A program made the position numbers and the translations under genes. A model generated the notes under the pieces. It searched no databases. It was not told the DNA's origin and saw only the letters and a program-made list of their open reading frames with translations. A DNA stretch of 64,000 nt from Chrysemys picta bellii (Eukaryota), in NCBI RefSeq assembly GCF_011386835.1, contig NC_088791.1, forward strand, positions 347,820,001 through 347,884,000, given 5' to 3'. Positions 1,543 through 56,495 of this stretch are shown here, piece after piece. The first letter of the stretch is position 1. Each line of letters opens with the position of its first letter.

Positions 1543-2740
1543 TAGGGTTACCATTCGTCCGGATTTACCCGGACATGTCCTCCTTTTTGTTCTAAAAATA
1601 GCGTCCGGGGGGAATTTGTAAAGCACTCAAAATGTCCGGGATTTCCCCCCTCCCCCCCCCCCGGCAGAGCAGAGCGAGCAGCTGGGAGGGCTGCAGGAAA
1701 GTCCCGGGCTGGACTCCGGAGCAGCTGTAGAGGAGCCGGATCCGCCCTGCATTCTGAGCCGGCAGCTCTCCCCTGCAGCCCGGTCCAGCAGCACTGTGCA
1801 GGGCCAGGGACCGGGTTTTGTTGTGCTGGGGAGCGCAGCCACGTGTCCCGCTTGCACAGAGCCCAACACCCTGTTCTGAGCAGCAGGGTAAGGGGGCCAG
1901 GGGGCAGGAGAAGGGGCAGGGAGGTTCTGGAGGGGGCAGTCAAGAAACGGGGGGGGCTTTTTGGGGGGAGTGGAGAAAGTTTTGGGCAGTCAGGGTACAG
2001 GTAGGGGGTAGGGTCCTGGGGGGAAGTTGGGGGCGGTCTTAGGAGGGGGCAGTTAGGGGACAAGGAACAGGGAGTCTTAGGTAGGGGGTGGGGTTCTGGA
2101 GGGCAGTTAGGAGCAGGGGTCCCAGGAGGGGGCAGTCAGGGGACAAGGAGCGGGGGGGGTGGGGGGCTGGGAGTTCTGGGGGGGAGCTGTCAGGGGGCAG
2201 GAGTGCGGAGAGGGATCGGAGCAGTCAGGGGACAGGGAGCAGAGGGGTTTAGATGGGTTGGGAGTTCTGGGGGGGGGCTGTCAGGGGGCAGGAGTGGGGA
2301 GAGGGATCGGAGCAGTCAGGGGACAGGGAGCAGAGGGGTTTAGATGGGTTGGGAGTTCTGGGGGGGGCTGTCAGGGGGCAGGAGTGCGGAGAGGGATCGG
2401 AGCAGTCAGGGGACAGGGAGCAGAGGGGTTTAGATGGGTTGGGAGTTCTGGGGGGGCTGTCAGGGGGTGGGGAGTGGTTGGATGGGGCGTGGGAGTCCCA
2501 GGGGTCTGTCTGGGGGTGGGGGTGTGGATAAGGGTTGGGGCAGTCAGGGGACAAGAGGCAGAGAGGCTTAGATAGGGAGTGGAGTCCTGGGGGGCAGTTA
2601 GGGGCAGGGGTCCCAGGAGGGGGCAGTCAGGGGACAAGGAACGGGGGGAGGGTTGGGGGTTCTGGGGGGCGGGAAGTGGGAGGGGCAGGGGCGGGGCTCC
2701 TCCCGTCCTCTTTTTTGCTTGCTGAAATATGGTAACCCTA
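1543..2740. mobile_element. Nested hAT element (Tip100/MER96-like TIR)
   Basis: TIRs TAGGGTTACCAT / ATGGTAACCCTA; perfect 8-bp TSD tgcgggag at 1535-1542 and 2741-2748. Confidence 0.85.
2170..2460. repeat. G-rich tandem repeat, about 90-nt unit x3, inside the nested hAT element
   Basis: Unit gggagttctggggggggctgtcagggggcaggagt...agaggggtttagatgggtt recurs near 2170, 2261, 2351 and 2441. Confidence 0.8.
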
Positions 2741-3119
2741 TGCGGGAGGGGAGCTGGGGTTGCCATGCCGTTAAAAGTCCAGTCAGCTCCGCGCAACTTC
2801 CAGAAGCGACCGGCATGTCCCTGCAGCCCCATGGCGCTGGGGCGATCAGGGAAGCTCTGCGCGCTGCCCCCACCCCCAGCGCTGGCTCTGCAGCTCCCAT
2901 TGGCTGGGAACCGCGGCCATTGGGAGCTGTGGGGGCGGCGGCACTGTGCAGAGCCCCCTGGCCCCTCTGCCTAGGGGCCAGACATGCCGGCCACTTCTGG
3001 GAGCAGCACAGATCCAGGGCAGGCAGGGAGCCTGCCTTACTCCTGCTGCACCACCGAACAAGAGCCGCCTGAAGTAAGCGCCACCCCGGCCGGAACCTGC
3101 ACCCCGAACTCCCTGCCAC

Positions 3120-3720
3120 AGGTTGGAACCCCCTCCCGCACCCTAACTCCCTCCCAGACCCCACACCCAGCACCCCAACCCCCTGCCACAGGTCGCAACC
3201 CCCTCCCGCACCCTAACTCCCTCCCAGACCCCGCACCACGACCTACACTGCCTTCCCCAGGTCGCAACCCCCTCCCGCACCCTAACTCCCTCCCAGACCC
3301 CGCACCACGACCTACACTGCCTTCCCCAGGTCGCAACCCCCTCCCGCACCCTAACTCCCTCCCAGACCCCGCACCCAGCACCCCGAACTCCCTGCCACAG
3401 GCTGGAACCCCCTCCCGCACCCTAACTCCCTCCCAGACCCTGCACCCCCACCTGCACCCCAACCTCCTGCCCCAGCCCTGAGCCCCCTCCCGCACCCTAA
3501 CTCCCTCCCAGACCCCGCACCACGACCAACACTGCCTTCCCCAGGTCGCAACACACTCCTGCACCCTAACTCCCTCCCAGACCCCACACCACGACCTACA
3601 CTGCCTTCCCCAGGTCGCAACCCACTCCCACACCCTAACTCCCTCCCAGACCCCACACCCAGCACCCCAACCCCCTGTCACAGGTCGCAACCCCCTCCCA
3701 CACCCTATCTGCCTCCCAGA
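3120..3720. repeat. C-rich minisatellite, about 68-nt unit, inside the host hAT element
   Basis: Repeated ggtcgcaaccccctcccgcaccctaactccctcccagacccc...; explains the repetitive ORFs in the track. Confidence 0.8.
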
Positions 3721-4550
3721 CCCTGCACCCCCACCTGCACCCCAACCTCTTGCCCCAGCCCTGAGCCCCCTCCTGCACCCCAAACCCCTCATCCCCAGCC
3801 CCACCCAGAGCCCAAACCCCCAGTCAGAGCCCTTACCCCCTCCCACACCCCAAGCCCCTTCCACAACCTGGAGCCCCCTCCTGCACCCTGAACCCCTCAT
3901 TTCTGGCCCTACCCCAGAGCCTAGGGGAAGCCCCGAACCTCCATGCCCCCTGCGGGGCTGTGTGTGGCCTGTGATTGATTTTTTTCTGTGGGTCGGTGGC
4001 CCTGAGGTTCCCCACCCCTGTGCTACAGCCTAGTGCGCTATGAAAACCCAAGAGAAAGTGACCACGAAGCCACCTTCTGGCGGCTTTTATATCCTAGGCA
4101 TCTCAATGAGACACAAGTGATGCCCCCACCTTTTTGACTTCTCCTTTGTCTTGAAAGTCTCACTCGATGCTCTGAGCTGAGCGCCCACAGTCTCGCCTCA
4201 AGAGTTGCTTGTTTCCACCCTTGCTGTGAGCTTCTCTCCACCCAACACCCACCCGTGGGTGCATCCCTTCTCTTCCCTCTGCATTACAGCACCAGACACT
4301 TGCTTCTGGTTGCACAATCCGACCCTTGCCCAGAGATTCAAGTGGCTGAGCACTACTGGCTTTGAGCCAGTGGATTCCTGGCCAGCTGCTGTTAACCAGT
4401 CTCAGATCCAGTCAAATCTCTTTCTGAACATTAGCATGGCCAGCTGTACAGGCCTCTGTGAGGTAAGGGCGAGGCTCGCCCCACAGCTGTGCAATGGGGA
4501 AAGGGTTAAGCATTGACACTGACCATCAGCTCTCCCACAGGCAGGTCTTT

Positions 4551-32756: not shown

Positions 32757-33921
32757 TCCGGTATCAGGGGCTTTGTCTTATATAGGCAACCATGCCCTCC
32801 CCCCCACCACCACAAAAAAGTGTCCCCATTTTTCACACTTGTGTTCTGGTCCCCTTACGTAGGAGCAATCCATGTCTGAGCCCCCACACTGCTGCTAGGG
32901 GTGAGGGGAGATTGTCACACATGGGAATGCATAAAACTCCCTCCCCCATGAAAAATGAACTGGGGCCCCCAGTGCAGCCTCTTCCCCTCAAATATGGGCA
33001 ATTATTGCCCTGCTGGTCTCTCTGCGATCCCCGTAGCTTTCCTGCTTCAGCCCCCTGCCCAAACCTCACACCCTCCTGGAGGAAAACCGAACCTGGCAGC
33101 CCTGCTCCCCCTGCACACGCCGGCTCACTCACATGCTCTCTGTCGTGCACACGCCCCTGCTCATTGGCGCTGACACAGGCTCTTTCGACGAAGCGGGGGA
33201 TACTTTTTTTTATCATTTCAAACTCTTATTTTTCAAACAAGACACCTCGGCCCCCAGCCGCTCGGCGTGTCATTCTCAGCCCTTTAAACCATGACTTCCC
33301 ACAAGCAAATGCAGCACCCAGAGTCACAGACGAGAGGGTTTGTGTTAACGGAAAAGTAACTTTCAGCCACTATTTAATCCCTCGACAATACCACTACTAC
33401 CATTAGGCAAGGAGACAGGGGTATTCCGCGGGGAAGTTTGGATGGGATGGATGAGAACAAAAAGAATTTCACCCCCTACCGCTGCCTATTCCCAGCACTA
33501 GTGAGCTTGGGGTGGGGGGATTTCCAGGTGGGGTTTCCACTTTCTGAAACTCCTGCGAGACCAGGAGGAGAGGGACAGTTGTCTGGAGCTCAGTGGTGCC
33601 TCCTTCAGGGAAGCGAAGCAAATGGTGTTTGCCCAGGTGCTGGAGTCATGAGCAGTCTTTGGTGGATGGTCTTGGGGCAGGCAGGCAGTAAGAGTGGGGT
33701 GGAGGGAATGGGGTGGTGGGGAAGGATCACATTCCAGTGGGATGACGGGGGGGAGGGGCGGGGTGAAGCCTCCACGAACTGGGTTGCTTGTTCTTATCAT
33801 GGATGCTGGATGGGCTCCGCATTCCCTCGTTACCGTGCTGTGCGAACCCTACAGAGAGAGTGGTGAGAGTGTGGAAAAGCTGGGCTGCGTGAGCCTAATT
33901 CCCCGCCAATGGACTGGCTCC

Positions 33922-36900
33922 TCAGACATTCTCCAGTGTCACAGGGTCGCCGAGCAGTTTGTAGCAGATCACAAAGTAGGGGTAGCACTGGGAGTTGTCG
34001 AAGATCACGTAGACGCCGGGCTTGTGGGCGTTGTCGCTGCAGGAGTCGTAGCGACACCTGCAGGATTCCCTCACCGGCGGCTGGGTGTACCCGGGACTCC
34101 CTAACACCCACTTGCCCACCAGGACCTTGGCCAGGAACATGTGGCGGCGGTCGGCGCGGTTGGCCAGAGCGAAGATGTGGGCGCAGTTGGCGTAGCAGGA
34201 GAAGTAGCTGCCATGGCCGTACTGGGCACCATGCTTTCCAGAGAGATGGGGGTTAAAGTTCGCCCGGCAGATGGGCTCCACGTTGTCGGCTGAGGTCCCG
34301 TGGAAGAGGTGCCTCTCCAGGAGCCGCATCTCCTGGGCCAAGAGTCCTCGGGACATTCGCTCCTTCTGGCTGAGGTGGGTGTAAAGGATAAACAAGGGGG
34401 TTTAGAGTCACTGCTGGTGCACCCCCACTATCTGCTCCCCTGGCCACTGAACACCTCAGCGGGGGATCCAGACACGAGCCCAATTCCCTCTATGACGCGT
34501 ACGTTCTCTCTTCTTGCTGTCCTGCATCTTCCTCACTAAACAGCTCGGCATCTCCTGCCCGGTCAGGTGCTGCACCGCCTGCCTCAGGCGACTCCCCTCA
34601 ACCCCACTCCTCTCTCTGCTCAGGATTCTCCCAGCTCCCTCTCCTCTCCTGGGTCCATCCCACCCCGCTTCCTCTCCTCCACCCCAGGCTCTGGCTGGGA
34701 CGTGTCTCTTCTTCTCTCAACCTCCAACCCCATCACTCACTTGTCTCTCTCACCCCCTCGCTCATCATCGTCAGCCTCTCTACCCTCTGCCTCCTTTCCC
34801 TCGGCCTTCCTTTCCCTCGGCCTCCCCAATTCACCACAGAGCGTTCCTTCACCACGACCTGCTCTCCAGCAGCTGGCCCGTTTCCCTTCGCCTCCAAACT
34901 CCTCATTGCCTCTTCCTCTCATCCCGCCCTCAGTCCCCCCAATCTGCCCCCAAGACTGTTCCCAGGTGGCTCCTTCAGGCCCGGGCGAGGGCCCCCCCTC
35001 ATCCTGATGCATCTCTCCCTCCCCTGGGCATCCCATGATGCTGTGCTGTCCCGGCTCCCAGCCCCTCAGCCTTCATGCCCCTCCTCACAGCACGCCTCTT
35101 TCCTGAAGCCCTCTGAAGTCTTTCTGTCGAGCCGGATATGGTTGGAAAGGACACGCTCCAGGTCAGCCGCAAGACAACAGGGTTGGAGTCGCTGAGGAAA
35201 ATTCTGAGGCCAGATGATTGTACCCCTGCGATGGGTCTCCTGAACCAACCCTTAGATACTCCTCCCTTAGGCCCACCCAGAGAAGATAACCCACCTAGTC
35301 ATGCCCACAGCACCGGCGTCAATGGCTTAATGGTGGGGTTAAAGCCGGTGACCTGGTCTGACCCCTGCCCCATCTCTTGCAGAATCCGTTCCTCTTCCTA
35401 CCTGCTGTATTTTTTCCAGAGTGCATCGTTCCGGATCCTGTAAATCTTCAGCACCAGCACCATGTCCTCTGGGACAGACGCGTGGAAGAGCTCACAGATC
35501 TTGCGGTACACCGCTTCCGACGAGGCCACCTCTGCATGAAGGAAGGCCTGGCCACAGGGCGGCTGGGGAACCCAGGCGGCTGGGTATGGGCCACAATACC
35601 CGTCTGTGGGTCTCTCCCCGGGGATGATGGATGTGGAAAGATGGAAGAGTCCCCAGGAGCCCCTAGGGACTGTCCTAAGGAGATAAGGAGATGGGAGATG
35701 CTGGCCAGTCAGAACGTAGCTTGGATCCCTCCAGCCATGGAACTGCCCAGGGAGTCACTTACCGCAGATACCGTGCCATGCAGCTCAGGGAACGGTAGGC
35801 AGGTCGGCGCTGGATCTGGATGGGTTGGACAGATCTCTGGCCTTCAGTGCTCCACTGAGGGGGTCTCAGATCCAGGGTGTAGAGCCTGCCCTGGAGCCAA
35901 AAGGTGGGTTCCTGGGAGCCCCTCTCCAAGGCTGCGAGGAGGTCGCGGGGGACAGGCTGAGCAGAGAGCGGAAGGAAAGTCGAGCCCTTAGCGTGACTGA
36001 AAGAGGAAAACCCTTACACGCATTGCTCCTTGCCACAGGACCCAGTCCTGCCCTGGAGGAACCGTCCAGTCCCGGGAAACCAGTCTCCAGCTTCATCCAA
36101 CCCTGGGCCGGCCATCCCATCTCCCCGGGATGCGCCAGCCCTACTTTGGAGAGCTCCCCCTCGCCCCCCCTTTGGGATCCCCCTCCCCCTTCACCTCCTG
36201 GTAACGCTGCCACGTGTCTCTGTGCTTCCAGTACACCTGCCACCTGGTGTGGAAGCGAGGATTCTGCTTCCAGTCCGAGGTGCTGCCCAGCCGCCTCACT
36301 CCATTAATCACGTCCGAATAGTCCATCTCCATGGTGTCCAGGTCCAGGATCCCAGACAACTGGTTCCTAAGAGGGGAAAATAATCTCACCTGTCGGCCCT
36401 AGGGGGCCCTTTTCGGGGAGGGGTCGGGACCGGGGTTCCCCAAACCACCTACAGTGGGGGAAATCTGAGGCACTCCCAGTACGCGGCTCCTTCCGCTTTT
36501 CCCTAGAGCTTCTGACCGGGAGACGCTGGGGAACCTGCCTAGCCAGCACTCCTGCCCTGGCTGGGATGGGAGCAGCTGGGAGATCGCTCCCCAGAGCCTG
36601 GTGCAGGCCCCCGTGGGGACAGACGGGGCGGGAGCGTTCCCATCCCGTACCTGCCCAAGAACCGCACGAGGCCATTTGTAGCGTCGCTGTAGAGCTTCTC
36701 CAAGTGACGCTGAGACGAGTCGCTCAGACTCTGCCACTCCACCCTTCTGCTCCCCCTGATCTGCCAGTGGAAGGGGTAGCGGGTGTGGTGGAGTGGGCAG
36801 CTCTCCCTCCGGGGGCAGTGCCCGAGCAGGAAGCCGTCACAGATCTGGATGCCGTCTTCCTGGTGGACATGGAAGGGGACCCCGTCCTTGCTGACCCATC

Positions 36901-38223
36901 GCTCCGTGGAAGGTGGGAAGCTGCACCAGCGTTTGGCAGGCATGGGGGATGGACTCTGGGGGGCCGCATCCCTCGTGGATGACGTAGGGGAGCCAGGGCT
37001 CACAGTGTCGGAAGAACTCAGATCCTGGATAGTTTGGGGAGCGGGAGAGATGGAGACACTTTAAGACAGGGGCGGGCAAACTTTTTGGCCTGAGGGCCAC
37101 ATCGCGTTTAGGAAATTGTATGGAGGGCCGGTTAGGGGAGGCTGTGCCTCCCCAAACAGCCAGGCGTGGCCCGGCCCCCACCCCCTATCCGACCCCTCCT
37201 GCTTCTCGCCCCGATGCCCCGCCCGGACTCCTGCCCCATCCAACCCCCCCGTTCCCTGTCCCCTTACAGCCCCCAGAAGCCCCGCCCCTGAGTGCCCCCC
37301 GCCACCCCATCCAACCCCTCCTCTCATTCCTGACTTCCCCCTCAGGACCCCTGCCCCATCCAACCACCCCTTCTCCCTGTCCCCTTACCGCCCCTGGAAC
37401 CCCTGCCCCTAACTGCCCCCTGCTTCCCCATCCAACCCCTGCTCCTTCCTGACTGCCCCCCCCAGGACCCCTGCCCCATCCAACCACCCCTTCTCCCTGT
37501 CCCCTGACCGCCCCTGGAACCCCTGCCCCTGACTGCCCCCCGCCGCCCTATCCAACCCCCCCTCCTTCCTGACTGCCCATCCGGGACCCCTGCCCCCATT
37601 CAACCCCCCCTGTTCTCTCCCCAACCACCCTGCTCCCTAGCCACACCCCCGCCTCCGGACCACACCCCCGAACTCCCCTGCTCTCTATCCAACTCCCCCT
37701 GCTCCCTGCCCCCTTATCGCGCTGCCTGGAGCACTGGTAGCTGGAGCCAGCCATGCTGTCGCCACGGCGCAGCACAGAGACCGGGGCAGGCCGGGCTCTG
37801 CAGCGGCACTGCCCCAGGAGCTCGCAGTCCCACTGCCCAGAGCATTGCGCCGGCGGTGGAGGGAGCTGAGGAGGCGGGGGAAGGGAGACAGCTGGGGAGG
37901 GGCCAGGGCGAGCCTCCCGGGCCAGGAGCTCAGGGGCCGGGCAGGAGGGTCCCACAGGCCGGATGTGGCCCGCGGGCCATAGTTTGCTCACCTCTGCTTT
38001 AAGGAGATGCGAAGCTGCTCTGGGACTCGGCCGCACCTACCCCCTTATCCTCTGCCCCCTCCCCATCAGTGTCTTCATCCCCCCTCCACGCATACAGACC
38101 CGCACGGCTCCCCCCATCAGAACCAGCTCTCCTGGGCTCCAACCCATCCCCCCCAGCCTTGCCCTGCAGGGACCCGTCCTCCTGGGCCCCGAGAGGGGAA
38201 TTCCCTCCATTTCGGTGGCTCAT
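33922..38223 (-). CDS. TIPARP/PARP7-like mono-ADP-ribosyltransferase paralogue; exons 38223-38041 (tentative), 37024-36651, 36366-36195, 35956-35763, 35674-35402, 34369-33922 (1644 nt, about 547 aa)
   Basis: CCCH finger ICDGFLLGHCPRRESCPLHH, WWE region WQVYWKHRDTWQRYQE / IQRRPAYRS, and PARP domain ERHLFHGTS...GHGSYF...MFLAKVLVG...YDSC...VYVIFDNSQCYPYFVI. All introns are GT-AG and phases 0,2,0,2,2 keep one open frame. An alternative acceptor 12 nt downstream at 35662 is also in frame. Not TIPARP itself by synteny. Confidence 0.85.
37067..37996. mobile_element. hAT MITE in the first predicted intron of the TIPARP-like gene
   Basis: TIRs CAGGGGCGGGCAAACT / AGTTTGCTCACCTCTG; TSD ctttaaga/ctttaagg. 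Confidence 0.82.
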
Positions 38224-39651
38224 GAGGTCCGTTTACCGGCTGGGGCTGGCGGTGGATTGGGTGGGTCCCCTCAGCGCCGGGCTCCTGTTCGGGATCAGCC
38301 GGGGAGATTTTCCTTTGGGGGCTACCCCTCAATTGGTTGAGGATCCCTATGGAGATCCTCTGGCCCATCCCCTCCCACACCCGCCGTCTGTTTCTCTTTG
38401 AACAGGAGGGTTCTTAGAACATCGGGGTGTCCCATGACGCCGATTGTTGGGTTTGTCCTGCAACACGAAGCCGCCGCCGGCCGAGCACCCCCAGGCACCC
38501 CAGAAGCGCCCCAGGGGGGCCAGGAACTGCCGGGGCTGCTTCTTGCCACTGGAGTCAAGCGCCTTTTTTTTTTTTAATCATCTCTTTCCACGCGTAAACT
38601 ATTTGTTTCAGAAACAACGTGGCAAATGTCGCTGCTCCCCCACAGCCGCTGGCGCTCAGATGTCAGGGTGACGTGGGCCCCAGAAACGCCACAGATTGTT
38701 CTGACTCATGGGGCAAGTCGCCCCATCTCCCTGTGCTCGGTTCCCCCATCTGTACACCGGGGCGACACATGCAAATCCAGCTTTGTAAAGGGCCGTGAGG
38801 TCCAGAGATGACCCCGGGCAAGTGTCACCCCTTTGGAACTGAGCAGTTAGCTAAATTTGGGGTAGCGCGGGCAGGAGGAGAAGTCAAGGATAGCATCAGA
38901 AACACCTGCCTCTCCCTTGTTTATTTACGAAGATGATACAGAAAGTTCCGTTTCCCTGAACATAGTGGGAATCGAACAGCAGGAGACGCCGGTTCCTTTG
39001 CTCGCTGTTCCACGCCTGCCTTTCCCGCCTGCACTCTGTGCCCAAAAAGCTCGCTCTCTCTTTGCTTTCTCTCAGGGCCGCGTTACTGGCACTTCTGGCT
39101 ACTTGGCTTTCTTACTGCTTGCCACTCACTGTCCTGCTTTTCACTCGCCCAACCTCCCACCCCCCGCCCAAATGATGCCCAGCCAACCCCTGCCCCCATA
39201 GTTCCAATCCCTGGACCCTGAGTGGCCCTACATGTCCCTTTGGTTTGGCCAGAGATATGGGCCTGCTTAACTGTTTCAGCCCCTGGTTACAGCGGGCATC
39301 TTTACATGGAGCCTGATTGTAAAGCCGCAGCCAGACTCGACCTGGAACAAGACTTAACCCATTCCACCCCACTCCTATTATTACCTACCTGACAGCTGGA
39401 AAACCGGAGACACCAGAAATTGCCTGGCTCGGTGCGCATTGCAAAACCGTGTCTCATGTTGTATCTGAGAACGGGCGTGTGAGATTACATAAGTGTTTCC
39501 TGCTAGGGAGGTTTGCTAGGCTGCAGGATAGGGGAATGGTTTGTGAGAAAATCAGGACGTCAAACTTATTTAAAACTGGCTGTGCTGGCCAGAGTGGTGG
39601 AGAATACCTCTCAGGAGGGGGCAGTCCTGCGCTGGAAGAGATGGACTAGGC

Positions 39652-56453: not shown

Positions 56454-56495
56454 ATGGGGTGCTGCTATAGCAGCGAGAACGAGGCCACCGACCAG
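56454..56495 (+). CDS. LAMTOR1: Ragulator subunit LAMTOR1 (p18), coding exon 1; later exons not found in the window
   Basis: Strong Kozak gccATGG; MGCCYSSENEATDQ then a GTGAG donor. Matches the LAMTOR1 N-terminus (Gly2 myristoylation, Cys3/Cys4 palmitoylation) and the synteny. Confidence 0.92.

What the first reader, a model, noticed from the sequence alone, without database searches (positions are those of the whole stretch)
33922..38223. Apparently intact TIPARP/PARP7 paralogue at a locus where humans have none
Seen: six exons splice into one open frame with a C-x7-C-x5-C-x3-H finger, a WWE region and a full PARP catalytic domain. Established: TIPARP has this CCCH-WWE-PARP layout, is AHR-inducible, restrains type I interferon signalling, and maps elsewhere in human (3q25). 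The human LAMTOR1-TOMT interval has no PARP. Inference: this is a diverged second PARP7-like enzyme retained in turtles and lost in mammals, possibly forming an uncharacterised xenobiotic or antiviral ADP-ribosylation branch.
Basis: partly seen in the sequence, partly recalled or inferred. Interest (0 to 1): 0.78.

Follow-up and report, generated by a model that had tools for sequence, protein, structure and literature searches.

The report
Turtle TIPARP-like ADP-ribosyltransferase gene, already annotated
This is a real, expressed and conserved turtle gene for a relative of the enzyme TIPARP/PARP7. It is already in RefSeq as "TIPARP-like" and is one of several such copies that turtles, lizards, amphibians and fishes carry and that were not seen in mammals or birds, so it is uncharacterised rather than new.

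Summary
The gene is real. Its first exon (38223-38041) is wrong. Spliced RNA contigs from four runs (three organisms, three studies) join exon 2 to a donor at 38237. The true first exon is 38368-38237 and starts MGQRIS.

The corrected product is 530 aa. It has one C-x7-C-x5-C-x3-H finger, tandem WWE domains like the central domain of ZAP, and a PARP domain with an intact H-Y-I triad.

RefSeq already models it: XP_042696141.1, "TIPARP-like", matches residues 72-530 exactly.

Orthologues lie between an SFRP-like gene and TOMT in five other turtles examined, including a side-necked turtle. Pairwise dN/dS is 0.28-0.59.

It is not a moved TIPARP. An AU test rejects that grouping (p 1.6e-54), and other turtles carry canonical TIPARP on another chromosome-scale contig.

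It is not "the" second PARP7 either. It is one of five turtle-wide, dispersed copies inside an old TIPARP-like clade that also holds ray-finned fish, lungfish, caecilian and lizard genes. No bird or mammal member was seen.

AHR or interferon control has no sequence support. No paper found describes this clade.

The scan had already noted a sister copy 215.6 Mb away in this genome.

The parts
38237..38368 (-). Coding exon 1 (MGQRISIGIL...QPQP, 44 codons). The ATG is at 38368 in a good Kozak context (G at -3, G at +4). The 5' UTR and transcription start are not mapped.
   Evidence: RNA contigs join 38237 to 37024 and cover 62-65 nt of this exon. The frame is open from 38368. The same ORF is intact in Emydura, Trachemys, Caretta and Chelonoidis loci, and RefSeq models of Mauremys, Chelonoidis, Pelodiscus, Carettochelys and Emydura also start MGQR.
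37025..38236 (-). Intron 1 (1212 nt).
   Evidence: The joint skips 1212 nt with GT..AG ends on the minus strand, and RNA depth is zero at 38022-38170. The tandem repeat is at 37215-37611.
36651..37024 (-). Exon 2. It holds a Ser/Pro-rich stretch, the RefSeq start codon (ATG at 36943), the CCCH finger (36841-36785) and the start of WWE1.
36195..36366 (-). Exon 3: the end of WWE1 and the first half of WWE2 (RFHTRWQVYWKHRDTWQRYQE).
   Evidence: Junctions. Aligned to the ZAP central domain.
35763..35956 (-). Exon 4: the second half of WWE2 (PVPRDLLAALERG...IQIQRRPAY).
   Evidence: Some tortoise and Mauremys RefSeq isoforms skip or shorten this exon.
35402..35674 (-). Exon 5: the linker and the N-terminal part of the ADP-ribosyltransferase domain (YPAAWVP...IRNDALWKKYS).
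33922..34369 (-). Exon 6, coding part. It is the catalytic core, with His405 (34302-34300), Tyr437 (34206-34204) and Ile504 (34005-34003). The stop codon is at 33924-33922.
   Evidence: Pfam PARP 2.9e-16. PARP12 catalytic fragment E 6.4e-28, with H, Y and I aligned. Coordinates.
33245..33921 (-). 3' UTR of at least about 0.6 kb. An AATAAA lies at 33378.
   Evidence: The 2199-nt contig of run X1 has 605 nt beyond position 33850. The poly(A) signal is.

Best explanation
What it is: a functional, expressed member of the TIPARP (PARP7) subfamily, most likely an active mono-ADP-ribosyltransferase.

The 530-aa protein has four parts:
- A poorly constrained N-terminal tail of about 94 aa. Its first residues, MGQR[IL]S, are conserved and fit an N-myristoylation signal.
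- One CCCH zinc finger fused to two WWE domains. This is the same module as the ZnF5-WWE1-WWE2 centre of ZAP.
- A short linker.
- A C-terminal ART domain with the H-Y-I triad, which marks mono- rather than poly-ADP-ribosylating PARPs.

Shown here: the gene structure, splicing, domain folds, conservation of the triad, purifying selection, conserved synteny across turtles, and its place in the family tree.

Inferred from the PARP7/PARP12/ZAP families, not shown:
- It uses NAD+ to put single ADP-ribose units on itself and on targets.
- The ZnF-WWE module brings it to RNA or to ADP-ribosylated partners.
- A myristoyl anchor may place it on membranes, unlike nuclear TIPARP.
- Its fast evolution and the copy-number expansion point to a role in innate defence or stress responses.

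Evolution: it belongs to an old 'TIPARP-like' clade that was present by the bony-vertebrate ancestor and was not seen in mammals or birds. This clade expanded to at least five dispersed copies before living turtles diverged.
For: Splicing: four spliced junctions are identical in four runs from three organisms and three studies; the exon 1-2 junction is seen in three of the four runs.

Open frame: 530 aa. It contains RefSeq XP_042696141.1 exactly.

Domains:
- Pfam PARP is hit.
- The AlphaFold2 model has pLDDT 83.9 and pTM 0.84.
- The catalytic domain matches PARP12 (TM 0.91, rmsd 1.9) and PARP15/PARP10 (Z 26).
- Residues 31-220 of the RefSeq protein match the ZAP central domain, Z 14.3 with 169 of 182 residues aligned; by sequence E 0.0036.
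- H, Y and I are kept in all five orthologues aligned and align to the PARP12 triad.

Selection: dN/dS is 0.28-0.59, with p(<1) from 4e-5 to 4e-19. The finger region is 0.14-0.24 and the ART domain 0.26-0.54.

Synteny: the order SFRP-like > PARP > TOMT holds in Emydura, Trachemys, Caretta, Carettochelys and Chelonoidis.

Tree: the gene sits in a 100%-supported seven-row turtle group. That group lies inside a 23-row group of five turtle paralogue clades plus two lizards, which lies inside a 48-row clade (SH-aLRT 95) separate from canonical TIPARP (100).

Exon 1: the ORF is intact in the four other turtle loci where it was recovered.
Against: No enzyme assay exists. H-Y-I is necessary for activity but not sufficient.

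The emydid lineage has unusual residues just after the tyrosine motif (GSYFSCYANCAH, against the family consensus GSYFAxxAxYSH).

WWE1 and the N-terminal tail are weakly constrained. dN/dS is 0.5-0.7 for WWE1 and 0.8-1.07 for the tail, mostly not significantly below 1.

The RNA contigs stop 67-70 nt short of the first ATG. Use of that start, and hence myristoylation, is therefore not shown in this species. RefSeq starts at the second ATG.

The runs are only guessed to be RNA. Their tissues and conditions are hidden.

No PARP11 sequence could be put in the tree.

Absence from birds, crocodilians and mammals rests on the 120 hits listed out of 182 and on general knowledge of the 17 human PARPs.
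Confidence: 0.8

Rival explanations
1. One reading: a single extra PARP7-like enzyme kept in turtles and lost in mammals. It would be AHR-inducible or would restrain interferon like TIPARP, forming a new xenobiotic or antiviral branch.
For: It is a TIPARP-family paralogue at a locus separate from canonical TIPARP, and no mammal member of its clade was seen. Its protein evolves about five times faster than canonical TIPARP over comparable turtle splits. Path lengths are 0.38 against 0.07, as is often seen for defence genes.
Against: It is one of at least five turtle-wide copies plus other TIPARP-like genes. The clade is also present in fishes, a caecilian and lizards.

The 1.5 kb upstream of the ATG has no ISRE and only one AHRE core. 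It has two TTCNNNGAA sites and one NF-kB-like site, all weak evidence.

The protein lacks TIPARP's long N-terminal region.

No expression-condition data could be read.
Confidence: 0.15
2. A catalytically silent reader or scaffold, like ZAP. The ZnF-WWE module would do the work, and the ART fold would be kept only for structure or binding.
For: The finger region is the most constrained part (dN/dS 0.14-0.24). ZAP shows this route is possible in the family. The scan noted a sister paralogue that is said to have lost the catalytic histidine. There are odd residues after the Tyr motif in emydids.
Against: H, Y and I are all kept in five orthologues spanning the deepest turtle split. The ART domain is under significant purifying selection. 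It models confidently onto active mono-ARTs.
Confidence: 0.15
3. A transcribed but decaying pseudogene or annotation artefact.
For: Overall dN/dS is fairly high, up to 0.59. The N-terminal tail is near neutral. Some RefSeq isoforms in tortoises and Mauremys lack all or part of exon 4.
Against: The frame is intact in Chrysemys and in RefSeq or GenBank models of more than 15 turtle species. dN/dS is significantly below 1 in every full-length comparison. Splicing is precise in three organisms. Synteny is conserved across the cryptodire-pleurodire split.
Confidence: 0.02
4. The canonical TIPARP orthologue, moved to a new locus.
For: None beyond the shared domain layout and the QCYPYF motif.
Against: The AU test rejects a clade of this group plus canonical TIPARP (delta lnL 240.7, p 1.6e-54). 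Canonical TIPARP of 667-670 aa exists in Pelodiscus, Carettochelys, Pelusios and Eretmochelys on other contigs. In Carettochelys that contig is 54 Mb, against 383 Mb for this gene's orthologue. A painted-turtle genome paper reports Tiparp expression (PMC13077969).
Confidence: 0.01

Closest known systems
TIPARP / PARP7 (canonical, human 3q25 orthologue group)
   Same: - One CCCH finger, then WWE1-WWE2, then an ART domain with H-Y-I.
- The C-terminal motif QCYPYF, against QIYPEY in PARP12 and ZAP.
- Both lie on the same side of the split from PARP12/ZAP (SH-aLRT 98).
   Different: - Only about 34-35% identical.
- It sits in a different, well-supported clade, and the AU test rejects orthology.
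- It is 530 aa against about 660-670 aa, and lacks the long N-terminal region.
- It has a conserved MGQR[IL]S start instead.
- The WWE2 motif is W-x-x-Y-W, as in ZAP/PARP12, rather than W-x-Y-F-C.
- It gives no Pfam WWE_4 hit.
- It is at a different locus.
- Its protein evolves about five times faster.
RefSeq 'protein mono-ADP-ribosyltransferase TIPARP-like' models of turtles (for example XP_042696141.1 Chrysemys, XP_034636375.1 Trachemys, XP_044841150.1 Mauremys)
   Same: This is the same gene. XP_042696141.1 equals residues 72-530 of the model built here.
   Different: The Chrysemys, Trachemys and sea-turtle models start at the second ATG and omit the conserved first coding exon.
ZAP (ZC3HAV1/PARP13) and PARP12
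   Same: - The ZnF-WWE1-WWE2 module: Z 14.3 to 7kzh and E 0.0036 by sequence.
- The catalytic fold is closest to PARP12 among solved structures.
- The adenine-stacking Trp of ZAP WWE2 (W611; PMC9720839) appears to align with a conserved Trp here. The numbering was inferred, not checked.
   Different: - It has no N-terminal array of four or five RNA-binding CCCH fingers.
- ZAP has lost the catalytic triad, whereas this protein keeps H-Y-I.
- These proteins are the outgroup in the tree.

Membership tests
Canonical TIPARP/PARP7 orthologue group | Groups inside the clade of TIPARP orthologues from fishes to birds | tested here: not met
   Canonical clade support is 100. This gene lies in a separate 48-row clade. 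The AU test rejects the joint clade, p 1.6e-54.
Canonical TIPARP/PARP7 orthologue group | About 650-700 aa with a long N-terminal region; Pfam WWE_4 plus WWE plus PARP | tested here: not met
   This protein is 530 aa. Orthologues hit only PARP, with or without WWE, whereas Pelodiscus TIPARP hits PARP, WWE, WWE_4 and zf_CCCH_4.
Canonical TIPARP/PARP7 orthologue group | Is the only TIPARP-type gene at the TIPARP locus of the genome | tested here: not met
   Carettochelys has TIPARP on a 54-Mb contig and this gene's orthologue on a 383-Mb contig.
TIPARP subfamily in the broad sense (CCCH-WWE-WWE-ART mono-ARTs) | A single C-x7-C-x5-C-x3-H finger directly before the WWE domains | tested here: met
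   CDGFLLGHCPRRESCPLHH, residues 106-124. The Cys and His columns are nearly invariant in 61 family members.
TIPARP subfamily in the broad sense (CCCH-WWE-WWE-ART mono-ARTs) | Tandem WWE fold | tested here: met
   Z 14.3 to the ZAP central domain over 169 residues. WWE1 alone scores Z 7-8 to HUWE1, TRIP12 and RNF146 WWE domains. Pfam WWE is just above cutoff in orthologues.
TIPARP subfamily in the broad sense (CCCH-WWE-WWE-ART mono-ARTs) | ART fold with the H-Y-I triad | tested here: met
   His405, Tyr437 and Ile504 align to the PARP12 triad and are kept in five turtle orthologues.
TIPARP subfamily in the broad sense (CCCH-WWE-WWE-ART mono-ARTs) | Closer to TIPARP than to PARP12 or ZAP | tested here: met
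   The outgroup split has SH-aLRT 98. PARP11 could not be included.
TIPARP subfamily in the broad sense (CCCH-WWE-WWE-ART mono-ARTs) | Mono-ADP-ribosyltransferase activity | not testable with these tools
   Needs an enzyme assay.
TIPARP subfamily in the broad sense (CCCH-WWE-WWE-ART mono-ARTs) | AHR-driven transcription (AHRE cluster) | tested here: inconclusive
   There is one AHRE core in the 1.5 kb upstream of the ATG and no ISRE. The transcription start is not mapped.
PARP12 | Array of N-terminal CCCH fingers; QIYPEY-type C-terminus | tested here: not met
   It has a single finger and a QCYPYF motif, and PARP12 is the outgroup in the tree.
ZAP / PARP13 | Four N-terminal RNA-binding fingers and a degenerate catalytic triad | tested here: not met
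   There are no such fingers, and H-Y-I is intact.

The most novel reading that the evidence does not exclude
Turtles keep a fast-evolving, membrane-anchored (N-myristoylated) active mono-ADP-ribosyltransferase with a ZAP-like ZnF-WWE reader module. It would be one of five dispersed copies from an expansion, older than living turtles, of an ancient TIPARP-like lineage that mammals and birds lost. The family would be an unstudied ADP-ribosylation arm of reptile, amphibian and fish innate defence.
Probability: 0.25. Interest if true: 0.55.

Novelty: new member of a known kind. Interest (0 to 1): 0.35.

Why it matters
PARP7, PARP12 and ZAP are central to AHR signalling, interferon control and antiviral RNA sensing, and PARP7 is a drug target. 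This work shows that non-mammalian vertebrates carry a second, old TIPARP-like lineage, and that turtles expanded it to several conserved, expressed copies.

No paper in the searched library names or describes it. Comparative studies that take 'TIPARP' in reptiles or fishes as one gene may therefore be mixing paralogues.

The gene itself is an ordinary family member, and it is already in RefSeq. The practical gains here are:
- a corrected first exon
- a possible lipid anchor
- evidence of selection
- the gene's placement in the family tree

Tried and rejected
- The word-index search with the last exon alone found only fragments at 49% identity or less, because of its length filter. The exhaustive representative search was needed to reach the orthologue cluster.
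- Pfam on single exons misses the finger and the WWE domains.
- Synteny outside turtles could not be tested. The Hemicordylus protein is not on record. The Lerista locus has no called neighbour within 10 kb and no TOMT, SFRP or LAMTOR1 signal by tblastx. A tarpon homologue lies in a tandem pair next to a TRIM gene.
- The AU test under the mixture model on 84 rows did not finish in two runs. It was done on 44 rows under LG+G4.
- No PARP11 reference was obtained. The only PARP11-like candidate, P0112, does not match the PARP11 WWE structure 2dk6 at E 1e-5 or better.
- The promoter motif scan gave nothing convincing.
- No human sequence was used or searched.
Full report
**What is in the sequence**

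The finding lies on the minus strand. The zinc finger CDGFLLGHCPRRESCPLHH has the spacing C-x7-C-x5-C-x3-H. The last exon matches Pfam PARP at 2.9e-16. It also matches the human PARP12 catalytic fragment at 6.4e-28, with the His, Tyr and Ile of the triad aligned.

**RNA evidence and the corrected first exon**

Public runs that hold about a quarter of the stretch were laid on 33850-38300. These were four runs from three organisms and three studies. All four contain contigs that skip exactly 34370-35401, 35675-35762, 35957-36194 and 36367-36650. Every skipped piece has GT..AG ends on the minus strand. Exons 2 to 6 are therefore confirmed to the base.

Three of the four runs also show the next joint, which goes from 37024 to about 38237 and skips 1212 nt. 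Depth is zero over 38022-38170 in every run.

The frame stays open upstream of the true donor, back to an ATG at 38368. That ATG has G at -3 and G at +4. The corrected product is 530 aa.

The contigs end 67-70 nt short of that ATG, so its use in this species is inferred. The inference rests on two observations:
- The same MGQR[IL]S-initiated exon is intact in Emydura, Trachemys, Caretta and Chelonoidis DNA.
- It is the annotated start in Mauremys, Chelonoidis, Pelodiscus, Carettochelys and Emydura.

The runs are labelled RNA only by guess. However, contigs with introns precisely removed can only come from RNA.

**The gene is already annotated**

RefSeq XP_042696141.1, 'protein mono-ADP-ribosyltransferase TIPARP-like [Chrysemys picta bellii]', is 459 aa. 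It is an exact substring of the model, residues 72-530. Orthologues with the same name exist in these genera:
- Pond, box and Asian turtles: Trachemys, Emys, Malaclemys, Terrapene, Mauremys.
- Tortoises: Chelonoidis, Gopherus.
- Sea turtles: Caretta, Chelonia, Lepidochelys, Natator, Eretmochelys, Dermochelys.
- Other lineages: Chelydra, Pelodiscus, Carettochelys and the pleurodire Emydura.

**Locus**

- ANAPC15 on the plus strand, 11.8-15 kb.
- TOMT on the minus strand, with exons from 18.5 to 28.1 kb.
- This gene on the minus strand, 33.2-38.4 kb.
- An SFRP-like gene, 41.6-46.3 kb.
- LAMTOR1 exon 1 on the plus strand, at 56454.

The order SFRP-like (Fz + NTR), PARP, TOMT (Methyltransf_3), all on one strand, recurs in Emydura, Trachemys, Caretta, Carettochelys and Chelonoidis. 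The gene has therefore sat at this place since before the deepest split of living turtles. Outside turtles I could not test synteny.

**Selection**

I rebuilt the coding sequences of four orthologues from their loci. Each translates exactly to its RefSeq protein.

Nei-Gojobori dN/dS is 0.28-0.59 over all pairs. In the four full-length comparisons tested, the one-sided Fisher p values run from 4e-5 to 4e-19. By region:

| Region | dN/dS |
|---|---|
| Finger region | 0.14-0.24 |
| ART domain | 0.26-0.54 |
| WWE2 | 0.26-0.65 |
| WWE1 | 0.48-0.68 (mostly not significant) |
| N-terminal 71 residues | 0.8-1.07 |

The gene is therefore constrained but evolves fast. On the tree, the Emydura-Carettochelys path is 0.38 for this gene. 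A comparable pleurodire-to-Carettochelys path for canonical TIPARP is about 0.07.

**Family placement**

Canonical TIPARP was recognised through a fish protein with the typical C-terminus. That protein recovered named TIPARP orthologues from fishes, coelacanth, lungfish, lizards, birds and turtles, namely Pelodiscus, Carettochelys and Pelusios; Eretmochelys appeared as a cluster member.

I built a maximum-likelihood tree of 84 proteins rooted on PARP12 and ZAP-like sequences. It shows:
- The canonical clade has 100% support. It sits with one set of TIPARP-like genes and the lamprey sequences.
- This gene lies in a separate 48-row clade (SH-aLRT 95). That clade holds sturgeon and teleost genes, then lungfish, bowfin and a caecilian, then sauropsids.
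- Inside it, a 23-row group (100) contains two lizard genes and five turtle groups. Each turtle group spans deep turtle splits. This gene's group (100) is one of the five.

An AU test rejects uniting this group with canonical TIPARP (delta lnL 240.7, p 1.6e-54; 44 rows, LG+G4).

In Chelonoidis, three of the five copies lie at 143.1, 215.9 and 367.4 Mb of one chromosome. The copies are therefore dispersed, not tandem. Turtles also have a 468-aa copy on a microchromosome-sized contig and a roughly 540-aa copy in the other clade.

No bird, crocodilian or mammal member appeared among the 120 hits listed out of 182. This is suggestive, not proof. PARP11 could not be added to the tree.

**Structure and likely mechanism**

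An AlphaFold2 model of the RefSeq protein, built with a 61-sequence alignment, has pLDDT 83.9 and pTM 0.84.
- The C-terminal domain matches PARP12 (TM 0.91, rmsd 1.9, 38% identity). It also matches PARP15, PARP10 and PARP13 at Z 24-26.
- Residues 31-220 match the ZAP ZnF5-WWE1-WWE2 crystal structure at Z 14.3, with 169 of 182 residues aligned. The sequence-level E-value is 0.0036.
- The WWE2 strand reads W-Q-V-Y-W, like ZAP and PARP12 (W-x-W-Y-W). Canonical TIPARP has W-K-Y-F-C.
- The first Trp appears to correspond to ZAP W611, whose mutation abolishes ADP-ribose and PAR binding (PMC9720839). The residue numbering was inferred.

With H-Y-I intact in all orthologues, the most likely activity is mono-ADP-ribosylation. 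The ZnF-WWE module would act as the targeting or reader part. The start MGQR[IL]S fits the G2/S6 rule for N-myristoylation. This start is seen in this orthologue group and not in the three paralogues inspected. This last point is an inference only.

**Regulation**

The 1.5 kb upstream of the ATG contains no ISRE and one AHRE core. It also has two TTCNNNGAA sites and one NF-kB-like site. Nothing here supports AHR or interferon control, and the transcription start is unmapped.

A painted-turtle genome paper reports 'Tiparp' as anoxia-induced in heart (PMC13077969). I could not tell which family member that refers to.

**Literature**

No paper in the library contains 'TIPARP-like'. Searches for TIPARP paralogues in teleosts or reptiles found nothing relevant.

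**Verdict**

The first exon and the upper coordinate are wrong.
This is a true, functional TIPARP-family paralogue that was not seen in mammals. It is not a lone second PARP7 but one copy of an expanded, old and already annotated lineage.
- Its proposed xenobiotic or antiviral role has no direct support.
- The scan had earlier noted a sister paralogue 215.6 Mb away in the same genome (s1-325563).

Noticed in passing
window 37215-37611 (intron 1); similar Gly/Arg-rich ORF repeats at about 2159-3900: A 120-bp C-rich tandem repeat (3.3 copies, 85% matches) lies inside intron 1. ORFs at 2.1-3.9 kb of the window show a similar repeated peptide pattern, which suggests one repeat family spread over the window.
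   Followed up: partly
window 37066-37103 (intron 1): RNA contig depth is very high (more than 2000) here. Many contigs break at 37066/37067 and 37103, as expected for a fragment of a highly repeated, transcribed element.
   Followed up: no
window 33922-33924; L006, L007, L001: Chrysemys and Trachemys end at ...VTLENV. Caretta, Carettochelys, Emydura, Mauremys and the tortoises read on for 10-33 more residues (GVGGAG...). The emydid lineage therefore seems to have gained an earlier stop.
   Followed up: partly
P0037, P0184, P0185, P0223 (tortoise and Mauremys RefSeq isoforms): Some models skip exon 4, or use an inner acceptor in it. This removes half of WWE2 and, in tortoises, reads part of intron 4 instead. 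Newer models (P0460, P0457; 553 aa) are longer and probably include it. This could be alternative splicing or a model artefact.
   Followed up: no
L001 10001-10551 (Emydura): The Emydura model has no intron 1. Exons 1 and 2 are read through as one 551-nt coding exon. The painted turtle has a 1212-nt intron there that holds repeats.
   Followed up: no
L003, L008, L009 (Chelonoidis CM113690.1): Three of the five turtle paralogue groups lie at 143.1, 215.9 and 367.4 Mb of one chromosome. They are dispersed copies, not a tandem array.
   Followed up: partly
L004 10001-22200 (Megalops): The tarpon TIPARP-like gene is a tandem pair of two 600-aa genes, next to a TRIM-type RING/B-box/PRY-SPRY gene. 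This is a typical neighbourhood for fish immune-gene clusters.
   Followed up: no
window 38380-38430: An upstream ATG (MGHPDVLRTLLFKEKQT...) lies in another frame just 5' of the main ATG. It is the annotated start of a Gopherus evgoodei isoform. It could be a uORF or an alternative first exon.
   Followed up: no
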